64,000 nucleotides of DNA from Macrostomum lignano (taxonomy: Eukaryota), in contig NIVC01002618.1 in assembly GCA_002269645.1 (NCBI GenBank), forward strand, positions 1 to 64,000, in the 5' to 3' direction. The position numbers were made by a program, and so were the translations under genes. Below, in pieces: positions 22,702 to 46,611 of the stretch. Each line of letters opens with the position of its first letter. Within the stretch, counting starts at the first letter, position 1. The notes under the pieces are model-generated. The model ran no database searches. It saw only the letters and a program-made list of their open reading frames with translations, and was not told the DNA's origin.

Positions 22702-25700
22702 ATGCCACCACCTCGTAATCTGCCCTTATTGCAATGGCTACAACTGATTATGCTATTGACAGCCTCGTCTCAACTATTAGTCTGCTCAAGTGAGGAGCTA
22801 ACCAAGCTTAGCTTCTATCGCAATGCTCAGATTAATGGAGAAATTCTTGCTTACGTTGATTTCGATGCGGATGGCTGGATTGATTTTATAGCGCTGGAAG
22901 CTGCTAGTAACAGCGAGCGGAATAAGCAATCTAATGAACAGTTGATACGGCTGCATCTGTGGGAGCAGGTAATTCAACTCAAGGTGTGCTGTAAAGAAGT
23001 AGGGCCAGAAGGCATAGCAGGGAGCATAGAAAGAGGGAGGGACCAGAGACAGGGGGAGAGACCAGAGGGACAGGGAGAGACTAGAGGGACAGGGAGAGAC
23101 CAGAGGGACAGGGGGAGACCAGAGGGACAGGGGGAGAGACCAGAGGGACAGGGAGAGACCAGAGGGACAGGGGGAGAGACCAGAGGGACAGGGAGAGACC
23201 AGAGGGACAGGGAGAGACCAGAGAAACAGGGGGAGAGACCAGAGGGACAGGGAGAGACCAGAGGGACAGGGAGAGACCAGAGGGGAGAGACAGGGGGAGA
23301 GACCAGAGGGACAGGGAGAGACCAGAGGGACAGGGAGAGACCAGAGGGACAGGGAGAGACCAGAGGGACAGGGAGAGACCAGAGGGACAGGGAGAGACCA
23401 GAGGGACAGGGAGAGACCAGAGGGACAGGGGGAGAGACCAGAGGGATAGGGGAGAGACCAGAGGGACAGGGGAGAGACCAGAGGGACAGGGAGAGACCAG
23501 AAGGGCAGGGAGAGACCAGAAGGGCAGGGAGAGACCAGAGGGACAGGGAGAGACCAGAAGGGCAGGGAGAGACCAGAAGGGCAGGGAGGAAGACCAGAAG
23601 GGCAGGTAGAGACCAGAAGGGCAGGGAGGAAGACCAGAAGGGCAGGTAGAGACCAAAAAGCAGCAGACAAACGCACCAATAGATAGCGACTCTGGGAAAA
23701 GGCTTAAATCCGAATCATGTGCGGCCGCACATTCGACACTGCATTCCGCAGGAAGCCTCCGTCATGGTGCCCTCGATAGCGTCAAGCCACACTCTGTTGA
23801 GATCAACCGATCTTCTCCTGCCAGGCGGTGGGCAAGCCGTGATTGAAGCCACCTCGGTGGCAGACTTTAACGGTGACGCCCTGCCAGATTTGTTGATATC
23901 GGTGAGGGACAACTCTACTGATCGGCTGAGATTATGGATAGCCTATGGCCAGACAGATCGCCAGTCTGTTGGCCAGGTTGCCATGGTAACGGAGGCCGTT
24001 GATCAGCCCACGCTGTTCGACTACAATGCTGATTTGGTGACCGACTTTCTTGTTGAAGTGGCGCCCGGCAAGCCTGTGGTGTTTTGTGGCAGGCACAAAC
24101 AGTTGAGGTGAGCGACTGGAGGGGCTGCTTTTTATTGCTGCCGTTCTTTCTGTCCTCTGTGCCTGCCTGTGCGTAAGACTGTCTGTCTGTGTCTCCTTGC
24201 CTACGTAGCGGTCTGTCTACCTGTCTCAGTGTCTGCCTGTCTGTCTCATTGTCTGTCTGTGTCAGTGTCTGCCTTTCAGTCTCAGTGTCTGTCTATCTGT
24301 GTCTGTCTGTTGCCAGTCTCAGTGTCTGTCTATCTGTGTCTGTCTGTTGCCAGTCTCAGTGTCTGTCTAATTGTGTCTGTCTGTTGCCAGTCTCAGTGTC
24401 TGTTTATCTGTGTCTGTCTGTTGCCAATCTGTGTCTGTCTATCTGTGTCTGTCTATCTGTGTCTGTCTGTTGCCAGTCTCAGTGTCTGTCTATCTGTGTC
24501 TGTCTGTTGCCAGTCTCAGTGTCTGTCTATCTGTGTCTGTCTGTTGCCAGTCTCAGTGTCTGTCTATCTGTGTCTGTCTGTTGCCAGTCTCAGTGTCTGT
24601 TTATCTGTGTCTGTATGTTGCCAGTCTCAGTGTCTGTCTATCTGTGTCTGTCTGTTGCCAGTCTCAGTGTCTGTCTCTTTTGTCCCTTAATTTCATCGTT
24701 GATTGCAGTTATAATTGAAGGTTATTTATCTATATTTCATATCCTGCCCCTCATCTACGCTGTCCCAGCTTCACCAATTACACTGACGCGTTTCCCGGCC
24801 TGTCTCCGCAAGCCGCCCCGAACGCCAACTTGTTTGTCGACCTCAACGCCGATCTGCGCTCCGACATGCTGCTTCGCGTAGTTGTCGGACCGGCTGAGGA
24901 GAAATTCGTGCTGCTGTCGGCTTCGGCAGAGTCAGGCGGCTTTAAACGACAAACCGGCTTGTCAGCATTTGCTCTGCTGCCCAAATTTCTACTGGCTAAA
25001 GAGCTGAAGCACAGCGATAACCATACAAACAGCAGCAATGGGAGTAAGTTCAATGTTGCCGTTGGTCCGCCGGAGCCAATGTCGGCAGATTCCGACGCCG
25101 GCGTCGACCTGGCGCTGCCAGTCTGTCTGCAGGAATTTACTAGCGACAGTGTTGTCGGCTTAAAGACTCGACTTAAAACTGCTGCGTGGCGTTGTAGTAG
25201 CAACAGTTCGGCTGTGTGGATCTACAGCAGCGGCGCCGCCGCCTGGTGTCGCGTCGGTGTCGACGGTCTTGGGTCCAGGTTGGCGAGTTGATTTATAACT
25301 GCTTTAGTTAATATTGACTGTTTTTATTTAATAAAGATATCTAAACTCTTTACTTGGCTACTTGCAAGTTGGTCAGTAGTATAAAGAATCAGTTCATTCT
25401 CTTAAAAATCATTGGTAAAATGCGCTGCTTGCCTACTGATACTTGTCTGTAAGTAGTCTAAATCGAACATTTTCTTTTTTCTGTTACTTATAATTGCTCA
25501 TATTTCAAAAGCATTCCTGCAATAGTATACCTCGTAATCCTCATTCAGCTTCGCTCTTCATCCGGAGCTGCCATCGAGCAGTCAACTGCTGCTCCGTTTA
25601 CGAGCAGCCGACTTCGATCTTGACGGGCGTCAGGATCTGGTCTGTCTGTTGCGTCGCTTGTCGGACGGCGCCCTCGTTCCCGGCCTGCTTCGCTCCGTGT

Positions 25701-28700
25701 CGGACGACGATTCGACGCCTACGGCGGTTGATTGCGCTTCTGGCGCCAGCGCTAGCAGCTTCCGGTTTCGGGCCGAGGAGCTGCCTCTATTGGCCGCCTG
25801 CCAAGCTCACATTAGCGAGGGCGGCCAATGGGCTCTGGCGGCTGTGGCTCCAGCTGAGCTGGATTTGGACGGCTCGCCAGACCTGCTCACCCTGTGCCGG
25901 CACCCCACCGGTGCCGCTGTTAGTCGGACCTACTCTCAGGTGCGCTCAGATTGTCTTTGATAGGCGGACCTTTGTCTGAAATTCTCATTCTTCATTCATG
26001 ATTTCGTATCCCCTTTCAAAGTCAGTTGACCGTTTCCGAGATTTTGTTTAAATCTTAAGTCTGCTTTTCTGAGATATTTACTTCTTTTTGAAGTTAGGGA
26101 ATCCCTCCTTGCTAGTTTGGGAATCCCTTTGTCGAAGTTAGGGAATCCCTTTGTCGAAGTTAGGGAATCCCTTTGTCGAAGTTAGGGAATCCCTTTGTCG
26201 AAGTTAGGGAATCCCTTTGTCGAAGTTAGGGAATCCCTTTGTCGAAGTTAGGGAATCCCTTTGTCGAAGTTAGGGAATCCCTTTGTCGAAGTTAGGGAAT
26301 CCCTTTGTCGAAGTTAGGGAATCCCTTTGTCGAAGTTAGGGAATCCCTTTGTCGAAGTTAGGGAATCTCCTTTTTAAAGTTAGGGAATCCCTCTTTGCTA
26401 GTTGGGAAATCCCCCTTTTAAAGTTAGGGAATTCCCTTTTTAACTTAGGGAATCCCCCTTTGCTATTTGGGGCATCCCTTTTTAAAGTTAGGGAGTCCCT
26501 CTTTGCTAGTTGGGAAATCCCCTTTTTAAACTTAGGGAATCCCCCTTTGCTATTTGGGGAATCCCCTTTTCCGAGTTAGAAAGTTTCATTTTTGAAGTTT
26601 AGGAATTCCCCCTTTTAGAGTTAGGGAATCCCATTTTTAGAAATACCACTTTCTCTAGATTCGAAATCCATTTTTAAGTTCAAGGATCCCTTTCTTCTGT
26701 CGTGGGAAATCCGATTCTTCTTCCCTTCTTCCAAAGCAAGGAAATCTTCGGCTGCCTTTTTAATGCTACCGGAATATACAATGTTTAAACCAAATTATTT
26801 TCAAACGTTTCAATGTTCAGCCTCTGTAAGATGACGCACAGGTAACATTGCTATCTCACAACTCAGGTGCACAGTCAGCCTGGAAATTTCTTTCGCATTC
26901 AAAGCCTCAATTCCGCTCGCTGCTGGGGCCGCAGCCAGCAGTCCTGCACCTACGGCCGCCTGCCGCAGGGCCTCCCGGCGCCCGGGCCCTGTGTCCAGCT
27001 GTCCATCGAGCGGCGCAGCGGCGGCCATCGGGCCGAAACCGCCTGCCAGCTGGCGCAGTCCTCTGCTCACGGCCGCCTACCACTGCCTGAGATGCACTTC
27101 GGCCTCGGCCAGTATAGCAACTACATTGAGCGGCTGACTGTGGCCGTGCCCGACAATGTGCCCGGCGGAAGAGGTCTGTCTGTCTGTATCAGTGTCTGTA
27201 TGGCTGTCTGTCTGTATCAGTGTCTGTATCAGTGTCTGTATGGCTGTCTGTCTGCCTGTATCAGTGTCTGTATGGCTGTCTGTCTGCCTGTATCAGTGTC
27301 TGTATGGCTCTGTCTGTCTGTATCAATGTCTGTATGGCTGTCTGTCTGCCTGTATCAGTGTCTGTATGGCTGTCTGTCTGTCTGTCTGCCTGTATCAGTG
27401 TCTGTATGGCTGTCTGTCTGCCTGTATCAGTGTCTGTATGGCTGTCTGTCTGTCTGTCTGTCTGTATCAGTGTCTGTATGGCTGTCTGTCTGTCTGTCTG
27501 CCTGTATCAGTGTCTGTTCTACTGTCTGTGTGTTTACGTGGACTTTTTGGAAGTTCAGTAGCCTCGTTAGCTGGACCAACCGGTGTAGGTAGACCACTTA
27601 GGTGGACCACCAAATAATTTTGTCTCTGGTGGGGTTAAGACGTTGATGAGGATCTCACATTAATGTCAGGCGGGTCAAGAAAGGCTTAAGCAATTTTGGG
27701 ATGTCTAGCATGGTTTTTTCCAAAGTTATTTGCATTTCAGTTTAGCTGGACCTCCAGCCTGGTCTACCTAAACCGAGCGAGTCTGGTCCACGTAAACCGA
27801 AAAATTTTAGAAAATTTTTCGAAAATCGTCTGTTTGTGTCTGTTTGTGTCTGTTTGTGTCTGTTTGTGTATAGCAGTTATTAAGCACAGATTCAATGCAA
27901 AACTGATTTTTTTACAGATCATTACCTTACGAACAAAGGGCTATGTTGGCATCATATTATGACCGCTACTGGCTTTAAAACAATATGCGTTCAGTTCTTT
28001 GACATTCAAGTCGGTACGCAGGTTAATTAAAAATTCTGAAACCTCGTATGCGAAATGAATTTGATACAGTAAACTTTAAACTCCATTTAATTAGCTCAGT
28101 TCCAGCAATTCCGGTATCGTACTCTGAGCACAGACTCACAGAGTAAGACACCAACGTAAAGAAATCCAATTCGCGAACCAGATCAAACGATAAAGACTCC
28201 GAGACAAGAAAGATATTTAAGTGAAGCTTAAATAGTATTCTTCAATGACTTCTCAAGAACTCCCAGTGGTCCTTGATAGCCACACTGTGTAAATGCGAAT
28301 TTCTGAGGCTCTACCATTACACAAGAAGAAAATAGCAACTTCATGAATTAAGTGCTTGCCAATTCTATCCTAAACACTATGGGATATCCTGTTCTATCCT
28401 CCTCCAATTTTGGAAGAAGAAGATCCTAAGCTGCAGCCTTTCAAGTGCAAAGTTGAAGATGCAATTTACCTAATTGAAAAGGACAATTCATACATGTACA
28501 TGCAAAAGATTTGATCAAGAGGACGCAATTAAGAAGGGCCTTTTAGCTAGCGATCGGGTCTCTGACTCTCTAGCAAAAGGTCGACTTGATTGCGGTCCCA
28601 GTAAAACTAAGAACGCATTAACAGTCAGCCTAACACTCACTGTCTGTTTGGTCCACGTAAACACATGTGCAGGAGTATAGGGTTGGAACAGACAGACAGA

Positions 28701-31700
28701 CAGACCTCCCTTTCTATAATTGGCTGGTTAACACTTAGGAGGATAGATCCACCCCAACAATGGGACCGACCGCAGCCAATAGGAAACCCGCAAGCGTTCT
28801 GAAGGTAAGACAGTGGAGAGAGGGATATATAATGTCTAAGCGGGTGGTCCACGTAAACCATGGCGTAGTGAGACCAGACACAGACAGTTTAAAAGAAAGT
28901 ACTTATAATCCATACTATACAACTCTAAAGGATTGCAATTGTATAGATTAGAACGGTTTTTTATACTTAATAGGTCTAATGTTAATCCTTACTCCAAGTT
29001 TCATCCATATATAAATTTATTGTGCCAAAAACTGTAATCTACAACCAAGATATGATGACCCGCAAAAAAGGACGCCAAGCCTAAAATAAAAACTAAAAAA
29101 ACACCGTCGCAAAAAGCCACTGCGAAATCGAAGAAGCCGCATCGCCTGGTGAAAATCATCAGTCTGCTCGCAAATCCGTCGACACCGAGTCCAGAAAAGT
29201 GAGTTTCGTTTGATGATCTCAAAGTAGCTAGCTGCAAGGCCTGCAACTCAATTGCTGTAGAGAAGCTGGTCCACCTAACCTACAGACACAACTGAATCAG
29301 CTCTCTCAGTCTGTTTGAGGCTTTGGCTCTCAGAAGGTGGTCCACCTAACCTACAGACACAACTCGAACAGATTTCTCTGTCTGTTTGAGGCTCTGGCTC
29401 TCAGAGCCGCCGAGAAAGTTTAGTGCAGAAAATGCTTCAGTTTGTTAGAATGCAATCAGAACAGATTCCTAGAAAGTGAGCTAGTCCAGCATCAAGGCAG
29501 AACATCTGGATGTGTAACGAAAGTCTCTCGGAGACTCCTGGCTCAGATTATCGCCTAGAAGTGCTGTGGAGTAGCTGGTCCACCTAACCTACAGACACAA
29601 CTCGAACAGATTTCTCTGTCTGTTTGAGGCTGTGGCTCTCAGAGCCGCCGAGAAAGTTTAGTGCCGAGAATGCTTCAGTTTTTTAGAATGCAATCAGAAC
29701 AGATTCCTAGAAAGTGAGCTAGTCCAGCATCAAGGCAGAACATCTGGATGTGTAACGAGAGGCTCTCGGAGATTCCTGGCTCAGATTATCGCCTAGAAGT
29801 GCTTTGGAGTAGCTGGTCCACCTAACCTACAGACACAACTCGAACAGATTTCTCTGTCTGTTTGAGGCTCTGGCTCTCAGAGCCGCCGAGAAAGTTTAGT
29901 GCCGAGAATGCTTCAGTTTGTTAGAATGCAATCAGAACAGATTCCTAGAAAGTGAGCTAGTCCAGCATCAAGGTAGAACATCTGGATGTGTAACGAAAGT
30001 CTCTCGGAGACTCCTGGCTCGGATTATCGCCTAGAAGTACTGTGGAGTAGCTGGTCCACCTAACCTACAGACACAACTCGAACAGATTTCTCTGTCTGTT
30101 TGAGGCTGTGGCTCTTAGAGCCGCCGAGAAAGTTTAGTGCCGAGAATGCTTCAGTTTGTTAGAATGCAATCAGAACAGATTCCTAGAAAGTGAGCTAGTC
30201 CAGCATCAAGGTAGAACATCTGGATGTGTAACGAGAGGCTCTTGGAGATTCCTGGCTCAGATTATCGCCTAGAAGTGCTTTGGAGTAGCTGGTCCACCTA
30301 ACCTACAGACACAACTCGAACAGATTTCTGTCTGTTTGAGGCTCTGGCTCTTAGAGCCGCCGAGAAAGTTTAGTGCCGAGAATGCTTCAGTTTGTTAGAA
30401 TGCAATCAGAACAGATTCCTAGAAAGTGAGCTAGTCCAGCATCAAGGTAGAACATCTGGATGTGTAACGAGAGGCTCTTGGAGATTCCTGGCTCAGATTA
30501 TCGCCTAGAAGTGCTTTGGAGTAGCTGGTCCACCTAACCTACAGACACAACTCGAACAGATTTCTGTCTGTTTGAGGCTCTGGCTCTTAGAGCCGCCGAG
30601 AAAGTTTAGTGCCGAGAATGCTTCAGTTTGTTAGAATGCAATCAGAACAGATTCCTAGAAAGTGAGCTAGTCCAGCATCAAGGCAGAACATCTGGATGTG
30701 TAACGAAAGTCTCTCGGAGACTCCTGGCTCAGATTATCGCCTAGAAGTGCTGTGGAGTAGCTGGTCCACCTAACCTACAGACACAACTCGAACAGATTTC
30801 TCTGTCTGTTTGAGGCTGTGGCTCTCAGAGCCGCCGAGAAAGTTTAGTGCCGAGAATGCTTCAGTTTTTTAGAATGCAATCAGAACAGATTCCTAGAAAG
30901 TGAGCTAGTCCAGCATCAAGGCAGAACATCTGGATGTGTAACGAGAGGCTCTCGGAGACTCCTGGCTCAGATTATCGCCTAGAAGTGCTTTGGAGTAGCT
31001 GGTCCACCTAACCTACAGACACAACTCGAACAGATTTCTCTGTCTGTTTGAGGCTCTGGCTCTCAGAGCCGCCGAGAAAGTTTAGTGCCGAGAATGCTTC
31101 AGTTTGTTAGAATGCAATCAGAACAGATTCCTAGAAAGTGAGCTAGTCCAGCATCAAGGCAGAACATCTGGATGTGTAACGAGAGGCTCTCGGAGACTCC
31201 TGGCTCGGATTATCGCCTAGAAGTACTGTGGAGTAGCTGGTCCACCTAACCTACAGACACAACTCGAACAGATTTCTCTGTCTGTTTGAGGCTCTGGCTC
31301 TCAGAGCCGCCGAGAAAGTTTAGTGCCGAGAATGCTTCAGTTTGTTAGAATGCAATCAGAACAGATTCCTAGAAAGTGAGCTAGTCCAGCATCAAGGTAG
31401 AACATCTGGATGTGTAACGAGAGGCTCTTGGAGATTCCTGGCTCAGATTATCGCCTAGAAGTGCTGTGGAGTAGCTGGTCCACCTAACCTACAGACACAA
31501 CTCGAACAGATTTCTCTGTCTGTTTGAGGCTCTGGCTCTCAGAGCCGCCGAGAAAGTTTAGTGCCGAGAATGCTTCAGTTTGTTAGAATGCAATCAGAAC
31601 AGATTCCTAGAAAGTGAGCTAGTCCAGCATCAAGGTAGAACATCTGGATGTGTAACGAGAGGCTCTTGGAGATTCCTGGCTCAGATTATCGCCTAGAAGT

Positions 31701-34700
31701 GCTTTGGAGTAGCTGGTCCACCTAACCTACAGACACAACTCGAACAGATTTCTCTGTCTGTTTGAGGCTCTGGCTCTTAGAGCCGCCGAGAAAGTTTAGT
31801 GCCGAGAATGCTTCAGTTTGTTAGAATGCAATCAGAACAGATTCCTAGAAAGTGAGCTAGTCCAGCATCAAGGTAGAACATCTGGATGTGTAACGAGAGG
31901 CTCTTGGAGATTCCTGGCTCAGATTATCGCTTAGAAGTGCTGTGGAGTAGCTGGTCCACCTAACCTACAGACACAACTCGAACAGATTTCTGTCTGTTTG
32001 AGGCTCTGGCTCTTAGAGCCGCCGAGAAAGTTTAGTGCCGAGAATGCTTCAGTTTGTTAGAATGCAATCAGAACAGATTCCTAGAAAGTGAGCTAGTCCA
32101 GCATCAAGGTAGAACATCTGGATGTGTAACGAGAGGCTCTTGGAGATTCCTGGCTCAGATTATCGCCTAGAAGTGCTGTGGAGTAGCTGGTCCACCTAAC
32201 CTACAGACACAACTCGAACAGATTTCTGTCTGTTTGAGGCTCTGGCTCTTAGAGCCGCCGAGAAAGTTTAGTGCCGAGAATGCTTCAGTTTGTTAGAATG
32301 CAATCAGAACAGATTCCTAGAAAGTGAGCTAGTCCAGCATCAAGGCAGAACATCTGGATGTGTAACGAAAGTCTCTCGGAGACTCCTGGCTCAGATTATC
32401 GCCTAGAAGTGCTGTGGAGTAGCTGGTCCACCTAACCTACAGACACAACTCAAACAGATTTCTCTGTCTGTTTGAGGCTCTGGCTCTTAGGTGGTCCACA
32501 TAACCTACAGACAACTGAAGCAGCTCTCTCAGTCTGTTTGAGGCTTTGGCTCTCAGAAGGTGGTCCACCTAGCCTACAGACACAACTCGAACAGATTTCT
32601 CTGTCTGTTTGAGGCTCTGGCTCTCAGAGCCGCCGAGAAAGTTTAGTGCCGAGAATGCTTCAGTTTGTTAGAATGCAATCAGAACAGATTCCTAGAAAGT
32701 GAGCTAGTCCAGCATCAAGGTAGAACATCTGGATGTGTAACGAGAGGCTCTTGGAGATTCCTGGCTCAGATTATCGCCTAGAAGTGCTTTGGAGTAGCTG
32801 GTCCACCTAAACTACAGACACAACTCGAACAGATTTCTCTGTCTGTTTGAGGCTCTGGCTCTCAGAGCCGCCGAGAAAGTTTAGTGCCGAGAATGCTTCA
32901 GTTTGTTAGAATGCAATCAGAACAGATTCCTAGAAAGTGAGCTAGTCCAGCATCAAGGCAGAACATCTGGATGTGTAACGAGAGGCTCTTGGAGATTCCT
33001 GGCTCAGATTTTCGCCTAGAAGTGCTGTGGAGTAGCTGGTCCACCTAACCTACAGACACAACTCGAACAGATTTCTGTCTGTTTGAGGCTCTGGCTCTTA
33101 GAGCCGCCGAGAAAGTTTAGTGCCGAGAATGCTTCAGTTTGTTAGAATGCAATCAGAACAGATTCCTAGAAAGTGAGCTAGTCCAGCATCAAGGCAGAAC
33201 ATCTGGATGTGTAACGAGAGGCTCTTGGAGATTCCTGGCTCAGATTATCGCCTAGAAGTGCTGTGGAGTAGCTGGTCCACCTAACCTACAGACACAACTC
33301 GAACAGATTTCTGTCTGTTTGAGGCTCTGGCTCTTAGAGCCGCCGAGAAAGTTTAGTGCCGAGAATGCTTCAGTTTGTTAGAATGCAATCAGAACAGATT
33401 CCTAGAAAGTGAGCTAGTCCAGCATCAAGGCAGAACATCTGGATGTGTAACGAGAGGCTCTTGGAGATTCCTGGCTCAGATTATCGCCTAGAAGTGCTGT
33501 GGAGTAGCTGGTCCACCTAACCTACAGACACAACTCGAACAGATTTCTCTGTCTGTTTGAGGCTCTGGCTCTCAGAGCCGCCGAGAAAGTTTAGTGCCGA
33601 GAATGCTTCAGTTTGTTAGAATGCAATCAGAACAGATTCCTAGAAAGTGAGCTAGTCCAGCATCAAGGTAGAACATCTGGATGTGTAACGAGAGGCTCTT
33701 GGAGATTCCTGGCTCAGATTATCGCCTAGAAGTGCTGTGGAGTAGCTGGTCCACCTAACCTACAGACACAACTCGAACAGATTTCTCTGTCTGTTTGAGG
33801 CTCTGGCTCTCAGAGCCGCCGAGAAAGTTTAGTGCCGAGAATGCTTCAGTTTGTTAGAATGCAATCAGAACAGATTCCTAGAAAGTGAGCTAGTCCAGCA
33901 TCAAGGTAGAACATCTGGATGTGTAACGAGAGGCTCTTGGAGATTCCTGGCTCAGATTATCGCCTAGAAGTGCTTTGGAGTAGCTGGTCCACCTAACCTA
34001 CAGACACAACTCGAACAGATTTCTCTGTCTGTTTGAGGCTCTGGCTCTCAGAGCCGCCGAGAAAGTTTAGTGCCGAGAATGCTTCAGTTTGTTAGAATGC
34101 AATCAGAACAGATTCCTAGAAAGTGAGCTAGTCCAGCATCAAGGTAGAACATCTGGATGTGTAACGAGAGGCTCTTGGAGATTCCTGGCTCAGATTATCG
34201 CCTAGAAGTGCTTTGGAGTAGCTGGTCCACCTAACCTACAGACACAACTCGAACAGATTTCTCTGTCTGTTTGAGGCTCTGGCTCTTAGAGCCGCCGAGA
34301 AAGTTTAGTGCCGAGAATGCTTCAGTTTGTTAGAATGCAATCAGAACAGATTCCTAGAAAGTGAGCTAGTCCAGCATCAAGGTAGAACATCTGGATGTGT
34401 AACGAGAGGCTCTTGGAGATTCCTGGCTCAAATTAACGCCTAGAAGTGCTGTGGAGTAGCTGGTCCACCTAACCTACAGACACAACTCGAACAGATTTCT
34501 GTCTGTTTGAGGCTCTGGCTCTTAGAGCCGCCGAGAAAGTTTAGTGCCGAGAATGCTTCAGTTTGTTAGAATGCAATCAGAACAGATTCCTAGAAAGTGA
34601 GCTAGTCCAGCATCAAGGCAGAACATCTGGATGTGTAACGAAAGTCTCTCGGAGACTCCTGGCTCAGATTATCGCCTAGAAGTGCTGTGGAGTAGCTGGT

Positions 34701-37700
34701 CCACCTAACCTACAGACACAACTCAAACAGATTTCTCTGTCTGTTTGAGGCTCTGGCTCTTAGGTGGTCCACATAACCTACAGACAACTGAAGCAGCTCT
34801 CTCAGTCTGTTTGAGGCTTTGGCTCTCAGAAGGTGGTCCACCTAGCCTACAGACACAACTCGAACAGATTTCTCTGTCTGTTTGAGGCTCTGGCTCTCAG
34901 AGCCGCCGAGAAAGTTTAGTGCCGAGAATGCTTCAGTTTGTTAGAATGCAATCAGAACAGATTCCTAGAAAGTGAGCTAGTCCAGCATCAAGGTAGAACA
35001 TCTGGATGTGTAACGAGAGGCTCTCGGAGATTCCTGGCTCAGATTATCGCCTAGAAGTGCTTTGGAGTAGCTGGTCCACCTAAACTACAGACACAACTCG
35101 AACAGATTTCTCTGTCTGTTTAGGCTCTGGCTGTTAGAGCCGCCGAGAAAGTTTAGTGCAGAAAATGCTTCATTTTGTTAGAATGCAATCAGAACAGATT
35201 CCTAGAAAGTGAGCTAGTCCAGCATCAAGGCAGAACATCTGGATGTGTAACGAGAGGCTCTTGGAGATTCCTGGCTCAGATTTTCGCCTAGAAGTGCTGT
35301 GGAGTAGCTGGTCCACCTAACCTACAGACACAACTCGAACAGATTTCTGTCTGTTTGAGGCTCTGGCTCTTAGAGCCGCCGAGAAAGTTTAGTGCCGAGA
35401 ATGCTTCAGTTTGTTAGAATGCAATCAGAACAGATTCCTAGAAAGTGAGCTAGTCCAGCATCAAGGCAGAACATCTGGATGTGTAACGAGAGGCTCTTGG
35501 AGATTCCTGGCTCAGATTATCGCCTAGAAGTGCTGTGGAGTAGCAGGTCCACCTAACCTACAGACACAACTCGAACAGATTTCTGTCTGTTTGAGGCTCT
35601 GGCTCTTAGAGCCGCCGAGAAAGTTTAGTGCCGAGAATGCTTCAGTTTGTTAGAATGCAATCAGAACAGATTCCTAGAAAGTGAGCTAGTCCAGCATCAA
35701 GGCAGAACATCTGGATGTGTAACGAGAGGCTCTTGGAGATTCCTGGCTCAGATTATCGCCTAGAAGTGCTGTGGAGTAGCTGGTCCACCTAACCTACAGA
35801 CACAACTCGAACAGATTTCTCTGTCTGTTTGAGGCTCTGGCTCTTAGAGCCGCCGAGAAAGTTTAGTGCCGAGAATGCTTCAGTTTGTTAGAATGCAATC
35901 AGAACAGATTCCTAGAAAGTGAGCTAGTCCAGCATCAAGGCAGAACATCTGGATGTGTAACGAAAGTCTCTCGGAGACTCCTGGCTCAGATTATCGCCTA
36001 GAAGTGCTGTGGAGTAGCTGGTCCACCTAACCTACAGACACAACTCGAACAGATTTCTCTGTCTGTTTGAGGCTCTGGCTCTTAGGTGGTCCACATAACC
36101 TACAGACACAACTGAAGCAGCTCTCTCAGTCTGTTTGAGGCTTTGGCTCTCAGAAGGTGGTCCACCTAGCCTACAGACACAACTCGAACAGATTTCTCTG
36201 TCTGTTTGAGGCTCTGGCTCTCAGAGCCGCCGAGAAAGTTTAGTGCCGAGAATGCTTCAGTTTGTTAGAATGCAATCAGAACAGATTCCTAGAAAGTGAG
36301 CTAGTCCAGCATCAAGGCAGAACATCTGGATGTGTAACGAGAGGCTCTCGGAGACTCCTGGCTCAGATTATCGCCTAGAAGTGCTTTGGAGTAGCTGGTC
36401 CACCTAACCTACAGACACAACTCGAACAGATTTCTCTGTCTGTTTGAGGCTCTGGCTCTCAGAGCCGCCGAGAAAGTTTAGTGCCGAGAATGCTTCAGTT
36501 TGTTAGAATGCAATCAGAACAGATTCCTAGAAAGTGAGCTAGTCCAGCATCAAGGCAGAACATCTGGATGTGTAACGAGAGGCTCTCGGAGATTCCTGGC
36601 TCAGATTATCGCCTAGAAGTGCTTTGGAGTAGCTGGTCCACCTAACCTACAGACACAACTCGAACAGATTTCTCTGTCTGTTTGAGGCTCTGGCTCTCAG
36701 AGCCGCCGAGAAAGTTTAGTGCCGAGAATGCTTCAGTTTGTTAGAATGCAATCAGAACAGATTCCTAGAAAGTGAGCTAGTCCAGCATCAAGGCAGAACA
36801 TCTGGATGTGTAACGAGAGGCTCTCGGAGATTCCTGGCTCAGATTATCGCCTAGAAGTGCTTTGGAGTAGCTGGTCCACCTAACCTACAGACACAACTCG
36901 AACAGATTTCTCTGTCTGTTTGAGGCTCTGGCTCTTAGAGCCGCCGAGAAAGTTTAGTGCCGAGAATGCTTCAGTTTGTTAGAATGCAATCAGAACAGAT
37001 TCCTAGAAAGTGAGCTAGTCCAGCATCAAGGTAGAACATCTGGATGTGTAACGAGAGGCTCTTGGAGATTCCTGGCTCAAATTAACGCCTAGAAGTGCTG
37101 TGGAGTAGCTGGTCCACCTAACCTACAGACACAACTCGAACAGATTTCTGTCTGTTTGAGGCTCTGGCTCTTAGAGCCGCCGAGAAAGTTTAGTGCCGAG
37201 AATGCTTCAGTTTGTTAGAATGCAATCAGAACAGATTCCTAGAAAGTGAGCTAGTCCAGCATCAAGGCAGAACATCTGGATGTGTAACGAAAGTCTCTCG
37301 GAGACTCCTGGCTCAGATTATCGCCTAGAAGTGCTGTGGAGTAGCTGGTCCACCTAACCTACAGACACAACTCAAACAGATTTCTCTGTCTGTTTGAGGC
37401 TCTGGCTCTTAGGTGGTCCACATAACCTACAGACAACTGAAGCAGCTCTCTCAGTCTGTTTGAGGCTTTGGCTCTCAGAAGGTGGTCCACCTAGCCTACA
37501 GACACAACTCGAACAGATTTCTCTGTCTGTTTGAGGCTCTGGCTCTCAGAGCCGCCGAGAAAGTTTAGTGCCGAGAATGCTTCAGTTTGTTAGAATGCAA
37601 TCAGAACAGATTCCTAGAAAGTGAGCTAGTCCAGCATCAAGGTAGAACATCTGGATGTGTAACGAGAGGCTCTCGGAGATTCCTGGCTCAGATTATCGCC

Positions 37701-40700
37701 TAGAAGTGCTTTGGAGTAGCTGGTCCACCTAAACTACAGACACAACTCGAACAGATTTCTCTGTCTGTTTAGGCTCTGGCTGTTAGAGCCGCCGAGAAAG
37801 TTTAGTGCAGAAAATGCTTCATTTTGTTAGAATGCAATCAGAACAGATTCCTAGAAAGTGAGCTAGTCCAGCATCAAGGCAGAACATCTGGATGTGTAAC
37901 GAGAGGCTCTTGGAGATTCCTGGCTCAGATTTTCGCCTAGAAGTGCTGTGGAGTAGCTGGTCCACCTAACCTACAGACACAACTCGAACAGATTTCTGTC
38001 TGTTTGAGGCTCTGGCTCTTAGAGCCGCCGAGAAAGTTTAGTGCCGAGAATGCTTCAGTTTGTTAGAATGCAATCAGAACAGATTCCTAGAAAGTGAGCT
38101 AGTCCAGCATCAAGGCAGAACATCTGGATGTGTAACGAGAGGCTCTTGGAGATTCCTGGCTCAGATTATCGCCTAGAAGTGCTGTGGAGTAGCAGGTCCA
38201 CCTAACCTACAGACACAACTCGAACAGATTTCTGTCTGTTTGAGGCTCTGGCTCTTAGAGCCGCCGAGAAAGTTTAGTGCCGAGAATGCTTCAGTTTGTT
38301 AGAATGCAATCAGAACAGATTCCTAGAAAGTGAGCTAGTCCAGCATCAAGGCAGAACATCTGGATGTGTAACGAGAGGCTCTTGGAGATTCCTGGCTCAG
38401 ATTATCGCCTAGAAGTGCTGTGGAGTAGCTGGTCCACCTAACCTACAGACACAACTCGAACAGATTTCTCTGTCTGTTTGAGGCTCTGGCTCTTAGAGCC
38501 GCCGAGAAAGTTTAGTGCCGAGAATGCTTCAGTTTGTTAGAATGCAATCAGAACAGATTCCTAGAAAGTGAGCTAGTCCAGCATCAAGGCAGAACATCTG
38601 GATGTGTAACGAAAGTCTCTCGGAGACTCCTGGCTCAGATTATCGCCTAGAAGTGCTGTGGAGTAGCTGGTCCACCTAACCTACAGACACAACTCGAACA
38701 GATTTCTCTGTCTGTTTGAGGCTCTGGCTCTTAGAGCCGCCGAGAAAGTTTAGTGCCGAGAATGCTTCAGTTTGTTAGAATGCAATCAGAACAGATTCCT
38801 AGAAAGTGAGCTAGTCCAGCATCAAGGCAGAACATCTGGATGTGTAACGAAAGTCTCTCGGAGACTCCTGGCTCAGATTATCGCCTAGAAGTGCTGTGGA
38901 GTAGCTGGTCCACCTAACCTACAGACACAACTCGAACAGATTTCTCTGTCTGTTTGAGGCTCTGGCTCTTAGGTGGTCCACATAACCTACAGACACAACT
39001 GAAGCAGCTCTCTCAGTCTGTTTGAGGCTTTGGCTCTCAGAAGGTGGTCCACCTAGCCTACAGACACAACTCGAACAGATTTCTCTGTCTGTTTGAGGCT
39101 CTGGCTCTCAGAGCCGCCGAGAAAGTTTAGTGCCGAGAATGCTTCAGTTTGTTAGAATGCAATCAGAACAGATTCCTAGAAAGTGAGCTAGTCCAGCATC
39201 AAGGCAGAACATCTGGATGTGTAACGAGAGGCTCTCGGAGACTCCTGGCTCAGATTATCGCCTAGAAGTGCTTTGGAGTAGCTGGTCCACCTAACCTACA
39301 GACACAACTCGAACAGATTTCTCTGTCTGTTTGAGGCTCTGGCTCTCAGAGCCGCCGAGAAAGTTTAGTGCCGAGAATGCTTCAGTTTGTTAGAATGCAA
39401 TCAGAACAGATTCCTAGAAAGTGAGCTAGTCCAGCATCAAGGCAGAACATCTGGATGTGTAACGAGAGGCTCTCGGAGATTCCTGGCTCAGATTATCGCC
39501 TAGAAGTGCTTTGGAGTAGCTGGTCCACCTAACCTACAGACACAACTCGAACAGATTTCTCTGTCTGTTTGAGGCTCTGGCTCTCAGAGCCGCCGAGAAA
39601 GTTTAGTGCCGAGAATGCTTCAGTTTGTTAGAATGCAATCAGAACAGATTCCTAGAAAGTGAGCTAGTCCAGCATCAAGGCAGAACATCTGGATGTGTAA
39701 CGAGAGGCTCTCGGAGATTCCTGGCTCAGATTATCGCCTAGAAGTGCTTTGGAGTAGCTGGTCCACCTAACCTACAGACACAACTCGAACAGATTTCTCT
39801 GTCTGTTTGAGGCTCTGGCTCTTAGGTGGTCCACATAACCTACAGACACAACTGAAGCAGCTCTCTCAGTCTGTTTGAGGCTTTGGCTCTCAGAAGGTGG
39901 TCCACCTAACCTACAGACACAACTCGAACAGATTTCTCTGTCTGTTTGAGGCTCTGGCTCTTAGGTGGTCCACATAACCTATAGACACAACTGAAGCAGC
40001 TCTCTCAGTCTGTTTGAGCTTTGGCTCTCAGAAGTTGGTTCACCTCACCTACAGACACAACTGGAACAGATTTCTCTGTCTGTTTGAGGCTCTGGCTCTC
40101 AGGTGGTCCACATAACCTACAGACACAACTGGAACAGATTTCTGTGTCTGTTTGATTGTCAGTTAATTTTATTTTCTACCTTTGTAGGAGCCTGTGGTTG
40201 ATTTTGTTCGCCTGAGCTCGACGAGACTGACTGCGTTTCACCGAGATGAAGGTTAAAACGAACTGTAAAAGAAGATTCAAACCACTAATTGACGAGAAAT
40301 ATAGAAAGGTTCATCATAGAGCTGAGCTGACGAAAGCGGATTCGATGGCTGAGTAAGCTGAAATTCGTGAGAGAGGCAATGACAGATCAATAACAGAAGC
40401 GGTCCCGGACCACGGAGGCAGGGAAGGTCCAGGAGAATATTTCGTAGAAAAATAAGAAGATTAAGCCATCATCTGCGTGAACGAAAAGATGAAAGTCGGT
40501 AAAATGATAGGCTTATCATATGATTGCTCACCAACTCATTCAGTATAATAGGACTGATGTAGTCAAATCAATTTAATTTCAGTTTTAGTAACTTTTGTCG
40601 TTATTAAAAATGCCCTTCAACTTCTTGTAGGCTCGTACTCGGATGACCTTTTTTAACTAATGGAATCTTACGTTTGTTAACATGTATTTGAAGCATACAT

Positions 40701-42166
40701 TTTGACCTAAATTAGTTTTAATGAGTTTACAGTTAGTATTTGATATGATTCTGTATTTATTTTCAAAATGCTTTATTTTCATTCACCTTCTTGTATTCAC
40801 GCGACGCAACTAACTAATGCGATCGTACATTTGTTTAACCCGATTAACCCGATTAATAATGCTAAATAAATTGGTTTGAACTTGGGATATTTTCATTAAA
40901 TGACGTCGTAACCCTTTTATCTGTTCTTTTTGAGAATTTCTGTTTTAATTAGTTCAAAAGAACAGTTTAAAGCAATAAATTTTCTACAACGAAAGAGGTC
41001 TAACTAAACCAACTGTTTTTTTGCGGTCCACCTAACCCGGTCCCCAAAACGTAGTTAGTAAACCACCACAGTTTCCCCGAACTGGCTATTCCGTCAAGTT
41101 AACAAAAAGATAACCCTAGCTAGCCTTTCGCGTTGTCAAAACAGACTCTATTTTTTAACCGGAATTGCGTGGTCCACGTAACGCATTAACATAACTCAGG
41201 TCCCGCTAAACACACAGACAGTCGTAAGAGTGTATGGCTGTCTGTCTGTCTGTCTGCCTGTATCAGTGTCTGTATGGCTGTCTGTCTGTCTGTCTGTCTG
41301 TATCAGTGTCTGTATGGCTGTCTGTCTGCCTGTATCAGTGTCTGTATGGCTGTCTGTCTGCCTGTATCAGTGTCTGTATGGCTGTCTGTCTGTCTGTCTG
41401 TCTGTATCAGTGTCTGTATGGCTGTCTGTCTGTCTGTCTGTCTGTCTGTATCAGTGTCTGTATGGCTGTCTGTCTGTCTGTCTGCCTGTATCAGTGTCTG
41501 TATGGCTGTCTGTCTGTATCAGTGTCTGTATGGCTGTCTGTCTGTCTGTCTGTCTGTATCAGTGTCTGTATGGCTGTCTGTCTGTCTGTCTGCCTGTATC
41601 AGTGTCTGTATGGCTGTCTGTCTGTCTGTCTGCCTGTATCAGTGTCTGTATGGCTGTCTGTCTGTCTGTCTGTCTGTATCAGTGTCTGTATGGCTGTCTG
41701 TCTGCCTGTATCAGTGTCTGTATGGCTGTCTGTCTGCCTGTATCAGTGTCTGTATGGCTGTCTGTCTGTCTGTCTGTCTGTATCAGTGTCTGTATGGCTG
41801 TCTGTCTGTCTGTCTGTCTGTCTGTATCAGTGTCTGTATGGCTGTCTGTCTGTCTGTCTGCCTGTATCAGTGTCTGTATGGCTGTCTGTCTGTCTGTCTG
41901 CCTGTATCAGTGTCTGTATGGCTGTCTGTCTGTCTGTCTGCCTGTATCAGTGTCTGTATGGCTGTCTGTCTGTCTGTATCAGTGTCTGTATGGCTGTCTG
42001 TCTGTCTGTCTGTCTGTCTGTCAGTATCAGTGTCTGTATGGCTGTCTGGCTGTCTGTCTGTCTGTCTCTCTGTATCAGTGTCTGTATGGCTGTCTGTCTG
42101 TCTGTCTGTCTGTCTGTATCAGTGTCTGTATGGCTGTCTGTCTGTCTGTATCAGTGTCTGTATGGC

Positions 42167-42201
<35 letters not shown>

Positions 42202-42698
42202 ATCAGTGTCTGAATGGCTGTCTGCCTGTATGGCTGTCTGTCTGCCTGTATCAGTGTCTGAATGGCTGTCTGTCTGTCTGTATCAGTGTCTGTTGACAAT
42301 ATTTAACATTTATTTGCCAATAGTTGTCTGTCTTTCAGTCTGCGTCTGCCTGCCTTCTAGTTGCAGGGATAAATTCAAAGTAGGAATCGAAACAATTTTT
42401 TATTGATCCAGGCGATGCGGACGGTCCCAATCGGCGTCAACAGGACTTCGGTTTTATCATGCCAAACTCGCTACTATTAGTAGCACCCAGGCCGCCAGAC
42501 CAGCCGCACAAATGGCTGACGTGGCTCATTGTCCGACCGTTCAGTCATCCGCACGTGTGGGGCGTTGGGCTGGCCTTTCTGTTGGCCAGCGGTCTGGCAT
42601 TTGCCGTCGCCGGAGTGTTGCAGTTCGTTGAATACCGCCGAGACAAGGCGGATCGGGCGGCCGCGTCGCCCGCTGGCTTTATGTTCGATCCGCACTGA
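22702..42698 (+). CDS. ITFG1: Integrin-alpha FG-GAP repeat protein 1 (T-cell immunomodulatory protein / LINKIN)
   Basis: Exons 22702-22968, ~23683-24107, 24769-25278, 25549-25939, 26867-27173 and 42412-42698 have compatible phases. Signal peptide; FG-GAP motifs [51 protein letters not shown]-terminal [11 protein letters not shown]...[13 protein letters not shown]...W, then a TM segment and EYRRDKADR...FMFD, matching the ITFG1 layout. Confidence 0.92.
23030..23655. repeat. ~20-bp purine-rich minisatellite GAGACCAGAGGGACAGGG(G)A, ITFG1 intron 1
   Basis: Direct periodicity. Confidence 0.95.
24170..24680. repeat. ~37-bp TG-rich minisatellite, ITFG1 intron 2
   Basis: GTCTCAGTGTCTGTCTATCTGTGTCTGTCTGTTGCCA repeated. 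Confidence 0.9.
26090..26640. repeat. 22-bp minisatellite GTTAGGGAATCCCTTTGTCGAA, degenerating rightwards, ITFG1 intron 4
   Basis: Direct periodicity; the unit contains the palindrome AGGGA-A-TCCCT. Confidence 0.95.
27174..27515. repeat. Host minisatellite (TGTATCAGTGTCTGTATGGCTGTCTGTC...), left arm
   Basis: The same repeat resumes at 41231, on the other side of the large insertion. Confidence 0.92.
27521..41222. mobile_element. ~13.7-kb inverted-repeat-bounded element (putative DNA transposon, family unassigned) carrying a satellite array
   Basis: Left ACTGTCTGTGTGTTTACGTGGAC (27521-27543) vs right GTCCCGCTAAACACACAGACAGT (41200-41222) is a 20/23 inverted match. GGTCCAC(C/G)TAA-like motifs are inverted at the left end and forward at the right end. 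The same host minisatellite lies on both flanks. Confidence 0.7.
29262..40150. repeat. ~10.9-kb tandem satellite of a 238-bp monomer (236-bp variant), roughly 43-45 monomers
   Basis: GGTCCACCTAACCTACAGACACAACTCGAACAG at 29577 and 29815 (period 238); highly homogeneous, with interspersed 60-70-bp short units. Confidence 0.98.
41231..42295. repeat. Host minisatellite, right arm
   Basis: TGTATCAGTGTCTGTATGGCTG(TCTG)n units; accounts for the ORFs at 41230-42406. Confidence 0.95.
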
Positions 42699-42724
42699 TG
42701 TTGTAACTGTAGCAATTCACCCAT

Positions 42725-42960
42725 TATAAAGTTTGCTTTCCATACATATCGGATATGACAAAATACGCTTTGTAAAGTTGACTTTCGATACATATCGGAT
42801 GTAAAAATTTACGCTTTGTAAAGTTGACTTTCCATACATATCGGCTATAGCAATGTACGCTTTATAAAGTTGACATTCCATTGACCAGCGATATACCCTC
42901 AAGTTTACTTTCGATACATGTCGGCATAATAACGCTATATAAAGTTTGGTCTCTTTGATA
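42725..42960. repeat. Degenerate ~46-bp tandem repeat just 3' of ITFG1
   Basis: TAAAGTTGACTTTC(C/G)ATACATATCGG...TACGCTTTG, about 4-5 copies. Confidence 0.75.
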
Positions 42961-43444
42961 CATATGGGGAAAATGATTTTGTTGCTCTATGCATTTTTTC
43001 GTTTCATTTATAATCGCTATTAAAGTAGCTATCGTAGCAACGTCTGTCTATAATGCATTTTATTTTTTACTTTGCTGTCCCTAGCTTTAGTAATATTAAT
43101 TAATAGTACGCATTTCAAATTTGTACCAGAAGTATGACCTACCAGAAATAATCTATTTAGTATGATTTGTAATTGCATTGTGACAACTTGCATTTTCTGT
43201 TTGGTCGCTTTCCATTTCAATACTTTTTAAAATGTCTATTCTGTCCTCGAGTCTTTCACCGCTGACTTTAGAGATTAAAAATATAAGTTTTATTTTGGCG
43301 AAACGTTAATACCTTTTATTTGGAAAAATATTTGTTGATCATTTTTACTGATTTCTTTCATATTCTACGCTCGTATATAAAAAAATATTTCATAACTACT
43401 TTCAAGATGAGTAGTTAGTATGTATATAGGATAGGATTTAACAT

Positions 43445-43768
43445 GGGTTGCAGCCTAGTGGTAAGAGCGTCGGACTCACGACTTGAAGGTCGGGGGTTCG
43501 ATTCCCTATCCCGCTGGAAAAATTTGTGTCCTTAAACAAAACATTTAATTCTGCATTGCTTCAGTTCACCTAGCTGTAAAATGTGTGCCAGCATTAGCTG
43601 GGATAGTTAAGGAAGGGTGCGTGGCGACCCCCCTCCCGATTCTTGGACTGAACAGCCGTACGCAGCCTTCAGATGCGCCTCGCAATAGCTGCGGCTAAGC
43701 TGTCGGTTGCACATCTGGCCCAATTGGGGCAGGTGTAATCAATTATTATTATTATTATTGCTATTATA
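43445..43768 (+). mobile_element. CORE-SINE (tRNA head, CORE domain, (ATT)n tail)
   Basis: A-box GCCTAGTGGTAAG and B-box GGTTCGATTCC. TGTGTCCTTAAACAAAACATTTAATTCTGCATTGCTTCAGTTCACCTAGCTGTAAAATG resembles the MIR/CORE consensus GTGACCTTGGGCAAGTCACTTAACC...CTCAGTTTCCTCATCTGTAAAATG. The element ends in ATTATTATT. Confidence 0.8.
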
Positions 43769-43881
43769 TAGGGTTGTGAACATCGATGGACTAAGACTAA
43801 CGCTAATCATATTAATAAAAGAGGCCACACATAAAAATACATGTATGCATTTATTGATTCCAATATTTCAGCCAGGCAGCC

Positions 43882-46507: not shown

Positions 46508-46532
46508 CTTTAGTTAGTTAGCTAGTTAGTTG

Positions 46533-46611
<79 letters not shown>

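What the first reader, a model, noticed from the sequence alone, without database searches (positions are those of the whole stretch)
27521..41222. 13.7-kb inverted-repeat-bounded element carrying a 10.9-kb satellite, inside the last ITFG1 intron
Seen: ITFG1 exons 5 and 6 join in phase across a 15.2-kb intron. The intron's minisatellite stops at ~27515 and resumes at 41231. The gap is bounded by a 20/23 inverted repeat, has unique subterminal arms (~1.7 kb and ~1.1 kb) and holds ~45 near-identical 238-bp monomers. Inference: a mobile element that transports, or gave rise to, a satellite DNA. I cannot match the ends to a known superfamily; there is no unambiguous TSD (TGT is possible) and no CACTA, CAC or GG start.
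Basis: partly seen in the sequence, partly recalled or inferred. Interest (0 to 1): 0.8.

Follow-up and report, generated by a model that had tools for sequence, protein, structure and literature searches.

The report
Transposon-like insertion carrying a satellite array
One copy of a flatworm (Macrostomum lignano) gene intron holds a 13.7-kb non-coding insertion with inverted-repeat ends and a 10.9-kb satellite array, absent from two sister copies of the locus; it looks like one more case of a mobile element carrying or seeding satellite DNA.

Summary
The window is the first 64 kb of M. lignano contig NIVC01002618.1. The last ITFG1 intron (27174-42411, 15,238 bp) has a TGTC-rich 40-bp minisatellite interrupted by a 13,713-bp insert (27518-41230).

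Two paralogous or allelic contigs of the same assembly carry the minisatellite uninterrupted at exactly this point. Relative to them, TGT is duplicated.

A perfect 16-bp inverted repeat (20/23 extended) sits 3 nt and 8 nt inside the two junctions, and occurs nowhere else in the window. A motif, GGTCCAC(G/C)TAA(A)C, forms the inner part of both repeats, recurs in both arms and opens every repeat unit. Its core GGTCCAC occurs 62 times inside the insert and never outside.

The array has 41 monomers of 236-238 bp and 17 head-only units of 68-71 bp, all in one orientation, with block duplications. There are no genes, RNA families or protein domains.

Best reading: a non-autonomous inverted-repeat DNA transposon of unassigned superfamily, whose array is built from end-like units. 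Helentron/HINE and foldback membership tests fail.

Other copies in the genome could not be searched, so family-level mobility, and whether the array arrived pre-formed, remain open. It is a new member of a known kind, of moderate interest.

The parts
26966..27173 (+). 3' part of the penultimate ITFG1 coding exon (C2_ITFG1 domain); the donor GT follows at 27174.
   Evidence: Pfam PF23122, E 8e-14; in-phase join.
27174..27517 (+). Host 40-bp TGTC-rich minisatellite, left part. Its last 3 nt (27515-27517, TGT) are the left copy of the duplicated target.
   Evidence: empty-site comparison.
27518..27543 (+). Left end: tip TCT, then a 23-nt inverted repeat ACTGTCTGTGTGTTTACGTGGAC. Its inner 12 nt are the GTCCACGTAAAC motif in reverse orientation.
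27518..29267 (+). Left arm, unique and non-coding. It carries motif copies at 27598-27608 (-), 27761, 27785, 28650 and 28846 (+), plus (GTCTGTTTGT)4 at 27828-27869 and (CAGA)n at 28686-28705.
28650..28680 (+). Internal degenerate copy of the right end (GGTCCACGTAAACACA...GTATAG), 77% complementary to the left end.
   Evidence: pair I2.
28843..28898 (+). Second internal copy of the right end: GTGGTCCACGTAAACC, an 18-nt spacer, then ACACAGACAGT and a TTAAAAG tip.
   Evidence: (I12, I20).
29268..40155 (+). Tandem array of 58 units in one orientation: 41 monomers of 236-238 bp and 17 head-only units of 68-71 bp. Order: s F13 ss F9 ss F5 ss F5 ss F6 ss F3 sssss. Each unit starts with GGTCCAC(C/A)TAACCTACAGACAC and has the inverted box TGTCTGT 19-20 nt further on. 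A 2,583-bp block is duplicated at a 2,649-bp offset (33503-36085 against 36152-38734, 99.6% identical).
40156..41230 (+). Right arm, unique, AT-rich (37% GC) and non-coding, with motif copies at 41025 and 41171.
41199..41230 (+). Right end: GGTCCCGCTAAAC motif fused to ACACAGACAGT (inverted repeat 41200-41222), then the 8-nt tip CGTAAGAG.
41231..41233 (+). Right copy of TGT (a 3-bp target-site duplication, or the last 3 nt of the insert).
   Evidence: the junction with a single TGT is found exactly in L001. The junction with two is found 0 times, against 99 normal unit junctions.
41234..42293 (+). Host minisatellite, right part.
42412..42698 (+). Last ITFG1 coding exon (transmembrane tail and stop).

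Best explanation
The insert is a non-autonomous class II (inverted-repeat) transposable element of unassigned superfamily. It landed in the TGTC-rich minisatellite of the last ITFG1 intron in one of at least three copies of this locus in the M. lignano DV1 genome, duplicating TGT.

Its ends consist of a binding-site-like motif, GGTCCAC(G/C)TAAAC, fused to an ACACAGACAGT box and a short tip. I infer that a transposase supplied in trans recognises the motif.

The same two boxes head every unit of the internal array. The satellite is therefore built from end-like (subterminal-repeat-like) modules of the element itself, not from captured foreign DNA. The array then grew by unequal exchange of multi-monomer blocks.

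Shown: the insertion against the empty sites, the inverted repeats, the restriction of the motif to the insert, the lack of coding capacity, and the block structure.

Inferred: transposase-mediated insertion, the role of the motif, and the origin of the array from end modules.
For: Empty sites. L001 (NIVC01000070.1) and L003 (NIVC01001739.1) carry the uninterrupted minisatellite. The reconstructed empty junction with one TGT matches L001 exactly over 160 bp.

Inverted ends. The 16/16 core (20/23 extended) lies at both borders and nowhere else in 64 kb; chance expectation is 0.07.

Motif. GGTCCAC occurs 62 times inside the insert. It occurs 0 times in the other 50 kb of the window and 0 times in the 44 kb of L001 and L003.

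Shared boxes. The motif plus the ACAGACA box is common to both ends, to two internal copies in the left arm and to all 58 units.

No coding or RNA content. There is no ORF of 70 aa or more in the array, no Pfam domain in the arms, no Rfam family and no tRNA.

Array history. A block is duplicated at 99.6% identity, against about 98% between neighbouring monomers. 24 of the 25 variable columns are shared by two or more monomers.

Precedent. Transposons with internal satellite-like arrays are well documented (PMC7492417, PMC4079207, PMC12628747).
Against: No second, independent copy of the ends or the monomer could be examined, so the multi-copy, mobile nature of the family is untested.

The outermost tips are not symmetrical (TCT against CTCTTACG, a 4-nt indel). 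That is unusual for a fresh cut-and-paste insertion.

A 3-bp duplication could equally be repair microhomology.

The termini match no superfamily I can name, and no autonomous partner was found.

The contig is a haplotype mosaic. Its left flank is essentially identical to L001, and its right flank from 44.3 kb on is essentially identical to L003. The age of the insertion therefore cannot be read from the flanks, and a haplotype switch by the assembler inside the array cannot be excluded.
Confidence: 0.55

Rival explanations
1. It is a Helentron-type rolling-circle element (HINE/DINE-1-like). Such elements typically carry a central satellite-like array between two conserved modules. Here the array and the several 3'-end-like sequences in direct orientation would come from rolling-circle read-through.
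For: The insert starts with TC. The 5' inverted repeat begins 3 nt from the 5' boundary (HINE: 2-4 nt; PMC4067079). GTCT-type microsatellite tracts lie in the left module (27828-27869, 28686-28705), as in oyster Cg_HINE (PMC7492417). The central array is in a single orientation. Three right-end-like sequences plus 58 unit heads all point the same way.
Against: The defining 3' module is missing. The 3' inverted repeat ends only 8-11 nt from the boundary (HINE: 38-60 nt). No palindrome or stable hairpin follows it (DNA folding z-score about 0). The target is not TT or T-rich. TGT is duplicated, whereas Helentrons leave the target unmodified. There is no CTRR end.
Confidence: 0.15
2. It is not a transposition event. 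A piece of extrachromosomal or ectopic DNA, for example a circle excised from a satellite-bearing locus, was captured during repair of a break in the fragile minisatellite. TGT would then be end-joining microhomology.
For: Only 3 bp of junction homology, and asymmetrical tips. The host site is a recombinogenic minisatellite. M. lignano readily integrates injected DNA at random, with multiple transgene copies in one line (PMC5730564). The flanks are a haplotype mosaic.
Against: Random capture does not explain why both boundaries fall 3-8 nt outside a perfect 16-bp inverted repeat that exists nowhere else in the window. It also does not explain why that repeat is fused to the motif repeated throughout the insert.
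Confidence: 0.12
3. It is an assembly artefact: a chimeric or mis-expanded PacBio contig, with the insertion or its length not present in the animal.
For: The window and L002 are the same contig, so there is no independent assembly of the occupied site. The 10.9-kb array of 97-99.6% identical units is hard to span. The contig switches from L001-like to L003-like haplotype across this region.
Against: Both junctions fall in the same minisatellite unit in perfect register, with inverted ends. A random mis-join would not produce that. The stretch at 42300-43300 differs from both other contigs, so a genuine third haplotype exists.
Confidence: 0.05

Closest known systems
HINE / DINE-1 / Cg_HINE: non-autonomous Helentrons with central satellite-like arrays (PMC4067079, PMC7492417)
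   Same: Non-coding. Two conserved end modules with short inverted repeats close to the 5' end. GTCT-type microsatellite in the left module. A central tandem array in one fixed orientation. Dispersal into gene-rich DNA.
   Different: There is no 3' palindrome, and no 38-60-nt tail after the 3' repeat. The target is not T-rich. A 3-bp duplication is present. The array has 58 units and spans 10.9 kb, whereas the oyster study describes short arrays. The arms are kilobase-sized.
Tetris / foldback elements of Drosophila virilis (PMC4079207)
   Same: A non-autonomous DNA transposon whose internal tandem repeats of about 220 bp also form kb-size satellite-like arrays. The repeats are associated with the element's terminal regions.
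   Different: Tetris carries the repeats inside both long terminal inverted repeats, so in opposite orientations. Here all 58 units lie in one central array in a single orientation, and the inverted repeats are only about 23-30 nt long.
MITEs with internal satellites: Xenopus miDNA4 and Xstir, and the Donax tandem-repeat MITEs (reviewed in PMC12628747)
   Same: Inverted-repeat ends flank an internal array of variable copy number. The proposed route is from element-borne repeats to classical satellites.
   Different: Those are small elements, and miDNA4 is Tc1/mariner-type (per PMC12628747), which from general knowledge implies a TA target. This one is 13.7 kb with a TGT duplication and 2.8 kb of unique arms, and its monomer carries the element's own end motif.
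CACTA (En/Spm) elements, which have 3-bp duplications and subterminal arrays of transposase-binding motifs (from general knowledge, not tested against a library)
   Same: A 3-bp duplication, and a short motif repeated in both orientations in the subterminal regions.
   Different: The termini are not CACTA/CACTG, and no transposase remnant is present.
Tandem dimers from double insertion of a transposon, later expanded by unequal exchange (PMC5932611, title and abstract only)
   Same: Each unit head resembles a right-end/left-end junction: ACAGACA, 18-19 nt, then TGTCTGT. This matches the real ends if they were joined.
   Different: The similarity is weak. The local alignment scores z of about 3.8, and 1 or more of 300 shuffles beat it. 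The spacer alone gives P of about 0.02 for one unit type and is not significant for the others.

Membership tests
Class II inverted-repeat (TIR) transposon, non-autonomous | Terminal or near-terminal inverted repeats at both boundaries of the inserted DNA. | tested here: met
   16/16 core, 20/23 extended, 3 nt and 8 nt from the junctions. Unique in the window.
Class II inverted-repeat (TIR) transposon, non-autonomous | Target-site duplication of fixed length. | tested here: inconclusive
   TGT is duplicated relative to the empty sites. One insertion cannot separate a 3-bp duplication from microhomology or from element-borne bases.
Class II inverted-repeat (TIR) transposon, non-autonomous | An empty site at an orthologous or paralogous locus. 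| tested here: met
   L001 and L003.
Class II inverted-repeat (TIR) transposon, non-autonomous | Several dispersed copies sharing the ends, and an autonomous partner encoding a transposase. | not testable with these tools
   No DNA search of the M. lignano genome is available. Protein-level and collection scans returned nothing.
Helentron / HINE | A 5' subterminal inverted repeat 2-4 nt from the 5' end. | tested here: met
   It starts 3 nt from the boundary.
Helentron / HINE | A 3' subterminal repeat 38-60 nt from the 3' end, followed by a 5-10-bp palindrome or stem-loop. | tested here: not met
   Only 8-11 nt remain after the repeat, and there is no stable hairpin (z-score 0.1).
Helentron / HINE | Insertion into TT or T-rich sequence without target modification. 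| tested here: not met
   The target is GTCTGT^ATGG, with TGT duplicated.
Canonical Helitron | 5' TC, 3' CTRR with a nearby hairpin, and insertion between A and T. | tested here: not met
   Only the 5' TC fits. The 3' end is ...GTAAGAG(TGT), the site is T^A, and there is no hairpin.
Foldback / Tetris-like | Long terminal inverted repeats composed of tandem repeats in opposite orientations. | tested here: not met
   All 58 units are in the same orientation, and the arms share only the 16-mer and motif copies.
CACTA (CMC) superfamily | CACTA/CACTG termini with a 3-bp duplication. | tested here: not met
   The termini read TCTACTG... and ...CGTAAGAG. The 3-bp duplication alone would fit.
Satellite DNA | Long head-to-tail array of a monomer over 100 bp with higher-order structure. 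| tested here: met
   10.9 kb, 236-238-bp monomers, block duplications.
Satellite DNA | Presence at many loci, or high genomic abundance. | not testable with these tools
   None in the rest of the window or in L001 and L003.

The most novel reading that the evidence does not exclude
The satellite is a concatemer of mini-transposon junctions. Each 68-238-bp unit would be a right end joined to a left end, made by tandem multimerisation (double insertion, or rolling-circle copying of an excised circle). The whole 13.7-kb block would then move as a macro-transposon using one true left end and any of about 60 right-end-like sites. A transposase would thus directly create, resize and disperse a satellite.
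Probability: 0.12. Interest if true: 0.75.

Novelty: new member of a known kind. Interest (0 to 1): 0.5.

Why it matters
How satellites reach new chromosomal sites and where new satellites come from are still argued. Transposons with internal arrays are the leading candidates (PMC12628747).

Here an occupied site and two empty sites coexist in one genome. The boundaries are exact to the base. The array is much longer than the short arrays reported inside oyster HINE elements (PMC7492417). Its monomers carry the element's own end motif.

If genome-wide searches show paired ends around arrays of different lengths, this would be a clean system for watching a satellite being seeded in a gene intron. 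The animal is a transgenic-capable flatworm model. The intron grew from 1.5 kb to 15.2 kb, yet the public annotation still calls a full-length 705-aa ITFG1 across it.

The insertion is also a presence/absence marker between duplicated copies of a locus in a recently duplicated genome.

Tried and rejected
(1) Other copies, via proteins. I joined all arm and monomer ORFs (2,022 aa) and searched the 5.8-billion-protein collection. There were no hits, so no contigs could be fetched.

(2) Exact-pattern scans. The unit head and the terminus were scanned against JGI metagenome contigs, and a degenerate motif against viral contigs. All gave 0 hits. These collections are unlikely to hold flatworm DNA in any case.

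(3) Known RNA genes in the monomer (spliced-leader RNA, 5S, snRNA, tRNA). Rfam at gathering and E-value thresholds, and ARAGORN, all gave nothing.

(4) Transposase remnants in the arms. There was no Pfam hit better than E = 0.09. A splice-donor-like site at 29200 and an acceptor-like site at 40176 flank the array, but no open frame joins them.

(5) Helitron-type 3' hairpins. None was found.

(6) Homology of the monomer body to the arms. Only the short boxes match.

(7) Dating the insertion from flank divergence. I abandoned this. The left flank is 0.06% diverged from L001. The right flank is 2-4% diverged from both paralogues for 2 kb, and then identical to L003. The contig is a recombinant or mosaic haplotype, so the contrast between 2% monomer diversity and the young left flank cannot show that the array arrived pre-formed.

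(8) Literature on M. lignano satellites. Two searches of the open-access paper library returned nothing that describes this repeat.

(9) Random sampling of the genome through annotated proteins. I judged the yield too low (about 0.2% of the genome at best) and did not run it.
Full report
**Source and setting.** The intronless 808-aa ORF at 43882-46308 is SART1. It is 99% identical to Macrostomum lignano BOX15_Mlig011038g3. Fetching the contigs that encode the three members of that protein cluster gave three loci from assembly GCA_002269645.1. L002 (NIVC01002618.1, record range 33873-56308) is 100% identical to window 33873-56308. The window is therefore the first 64 kb of that contig. L001 (NIVC01000070.1) and L003 (NIVC01001739.1) are paralogous or allelic copies of the same ITFG1-SART1 region. 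The assembly is known to be redundant because of the duplicated karyotype of the DV1 line, and about 15% of the genome is simple and tandem repeats (PMC5730564).

**The observation.** ITFG1 lies on the + strand. The ORF at 26867-27175 hits Pfam C2_ITFG1. The exon ends at 27173 and joins in phase to 42412-42698. The intron is 15,238 bp.

The intron begins with a 40-bp TGTC-rich minisatellite (27174-27517), which resumes at 41231 and runs to 42293. The DNA in between has three parts:
- A unique left arm, 27518-29267.
- An array, 29268-40155.
- A unique right arm, 40156-41230.

Its 16-nt core, ACTGTCTGTGTGTTTA, occurs exactly twice in the window even with two mismatches allowed, once per strand at the two borders. 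Chance expectation is 0.07.

**Empty sites.** L001 and L003 carry the minisatellite uninterrupted. A colinear comparison shows 13,697 bp in the window against 21 bp in L001 at this point. Joining window ...27517 to 41234... reproduces L001 exactly over 160 bp. The alternative junction that keeps both TGT copies is found nowhere. The normal unit junction CAGTGTCTGTATGGCTG occurs 99 times and the variant with an extra TGT occurs 0 times.

The inserted DNA is therefore TCTACTGTCTG...CAGTCGTAAGAG (27518-41230), with TGT duplicated. The alternative is that the insert carries TGT at one end and there is no duplication.

The tips outside the 16-mer are unequal: TCT on the left, CGTAAGAG on the right. 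In inverted alignment, the right tip has a 4-nt insertion.

**Anatomy of the insert.** The heptamer GGTCCAC occurs 62 times inside the insert. It occurs 0 times in the remaining 50 kb of the window and 0 times in L001 and L003. It is the core of a 12-13-nt motif, GGTCCAC(G/C)TAA(A)C, often preceded by GT so that it reads as the palindrome GTGG-T-CCAC. The motif is found in these places:
- The inner half of both inverted repeats.
- The left arm, at 27598 (-) and at 27761, 27785, 28650 and 28846 (+).
- The right arm, at 41025 and 41171.
- The start of every array unit.

At 28650-28680 and 28843-28898 the motif is followed by an ACACAGACAGT-type box and a tip. These are degenerate internal copies of the right end.

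The arms share nothing else with each other or with the monomer body.

Nothing in the insert codes:
- No ORF of 70 aa or more in the array.
- No Pfam hit in the arms.
- No Rfam family or tRNA.
- No relative of any arm or monomer ORF among 5.8 billion proteins.

**The array.** It has 58 units, all in the orientation of the right end:
- 41 full monomers of 236-238 bp.
- 17 head-only units of 68-71 bp, in two subtypes.
- Order: s F13 ss F9 ss F5 ss F5 ss F6 ss F3 sssss.

A full monomer is a head of about 70 bp plus a body of about 168 bp. The head holds the motif, then ACAGACAC, a 19-20-nt spacer, the inverted box TGTCTGT, and a GGCTCTG/CAGAGCC hairpin.

Mean pairwise substitution divergence among the full monomers is 2.0%. 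Of the 25 variable columns, 24 are shared by two or more monomers. A 2,583-bp block is repeated at a 2,649-bp offset with 99.6% identity. This is the signature of growth by unequal exchange of multi-monomer blocks.

The head aligns with the real right end, TGT and left end laid tail-to-head. The score is 26, against a shuffle mean of 16.6 with sd 2.5 and a maximum of 33. The spacer alone gives P of about 0.02 for one unit type and is not significant for the others. I treat the idea that units are end-to-end junctions as a lead, not a result.

**What it most likely is.** The insert has exact boundaries against two empty sites. It has inverted ends fused to a motif found only within it, subterminal copies of that motif in both orientations, and no coding capacity. 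That is the anatomy of a non-autonomous inverted-repeat DNA transposon.

The array is made of modules that look like the element's own ends. The simplest origin is therefore amplification of subterminal, end-like repeats, followed by unequal exchange.

I could not assign a superfamily. A 3-bp duplication fits CACTA, PIF/Harbinger or Zator from general knowledge, but the termini do not read CACTA and no transposase remnant is present.

**Rivals.**
- Helentron/HINE is the best-documented class of satellite-carrying elements, and several features fit: the 5' TC, the repeat 3 nt from the 5' end, GTCT-type microsatellites in the left module, and a central one-orientation array. The defining 3' module is absent, however. 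Only 8-11 nt follow the 3' repeat, no hairpin forms, the target is not T-rich, and TGT is duplicated.
- Foldback/Tetris fails because every unit points the same way.
- Capture of ectopic DNA during break repair would explain the 3-bp homology and the uneven tips. It would not explain inverted repeats unique to the two borders.
- A pure assembly artefact is unlikely, because both junctions fall in register in the same minisatellite unit. The array length and the haplotype phase are still unverified.

**What remains open.** It could not be run, because no tool searches the M. lignano genome by DNA, and scans of metagenome and viral collections gave nothing.

Whether the array was carried in or expanded in place is also open. 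The left flank is almost identical to L001: 3 substitutions in 4.8 kb. The first 2 kb to the right differ by 2-4% from both paralogues, and from 44.3 kb on the contig is identical to L003. The occupied haplotype is a mosaic, either natural or created by the assembler, and flank divergence cannot date the insertion.

**Verdict.** It is a new member of a known kind, a transposon-borne satellite, and is notable for three things:
- The length of the array.
- The end-like motif in every unit.
- An occupied site and empty sites coexisting in the same genome.

Interest is moderate (0.5).

Noticed in passing
window 20200-27199, 42300-44300 and 44300-51300, against L001 and L003: The contig is a haplotype mosaic. 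Left of the insert it is essentially identical to L001 and 4-5% diverged from L003. For 2 kb right of the insert it differs from both (2-6%). From about 44.3 kb on it is essentially identical to L003 and 1-2% or more diverged from L001. This is either recombination or gene conversion between duplicated copies, or assembler haplotype switching.
   Followed up: partly
window 55331-57911 (ORF 55467-56648): A 2.6-kb insertion absent from L001. It carries a reverse-transcriptase ORF (Pfam RVT_1, E 6e-35) and abuts a (TAC)n tract. It is probably a truncated retrotransposon, and a second presence/absence difference between the paralogous copies.
   Followed up: partly
window 6994-9566, 46510-47551 and 51874-53336: Very long pure tetranucleotide microsatellites: (GCCT) about 643 copies, (TTAG) about 260 and (TGTC) about 366. 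The (TGTC)n tract is related in sequence to the ITFG1-intron minisatellite that received the insert.
   Followed up: no
whole window, e.g. 10277-11049, 11580-12282, 12538-13131, 14984-15557, 17201-17644, 23034-23655, 24211-24676, 26084-26642, 49161-49850, 50411-51120, 61908-62758, 63384-64000: An unusually dense series of unrelated minisatellites (19-51-bp units, 300-850 bp each), every few kb, in introns and between genes. This is consistent with the reported 15% tandem-repeat content of this genome.
   Followed up: no
window 43882-46308; L003 18639-21824: SART1 is a single 808-aa intronless ORF 1.2 kb downstream of ITFG1. L003 carries a second, partial tandem copy of the end of the minisatellite, the ITFG1 tail and the start of SART1.
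   Followed up: no
window 29195-29205 and 40170-40180: The array is bracketed by a splice-donor-like site (AAAAG|GTGAGT) at the end of the left arm and an acceptor-like site (TTTCTACCTTTGTAG|G) at the start of the right arm. It looks as if the array sat in an intron of a decayed element-borne gene, but no open frame joins across it.
   Followed up: partly
window 2777-6924, minus strand: Two long ORFs with multiple cadherin domains (Pfam PF00028, E 3e-62 and 1e-20). They are exons of a large cadherin gene, separated by the (GCCT)n tract.
   Followed up: no
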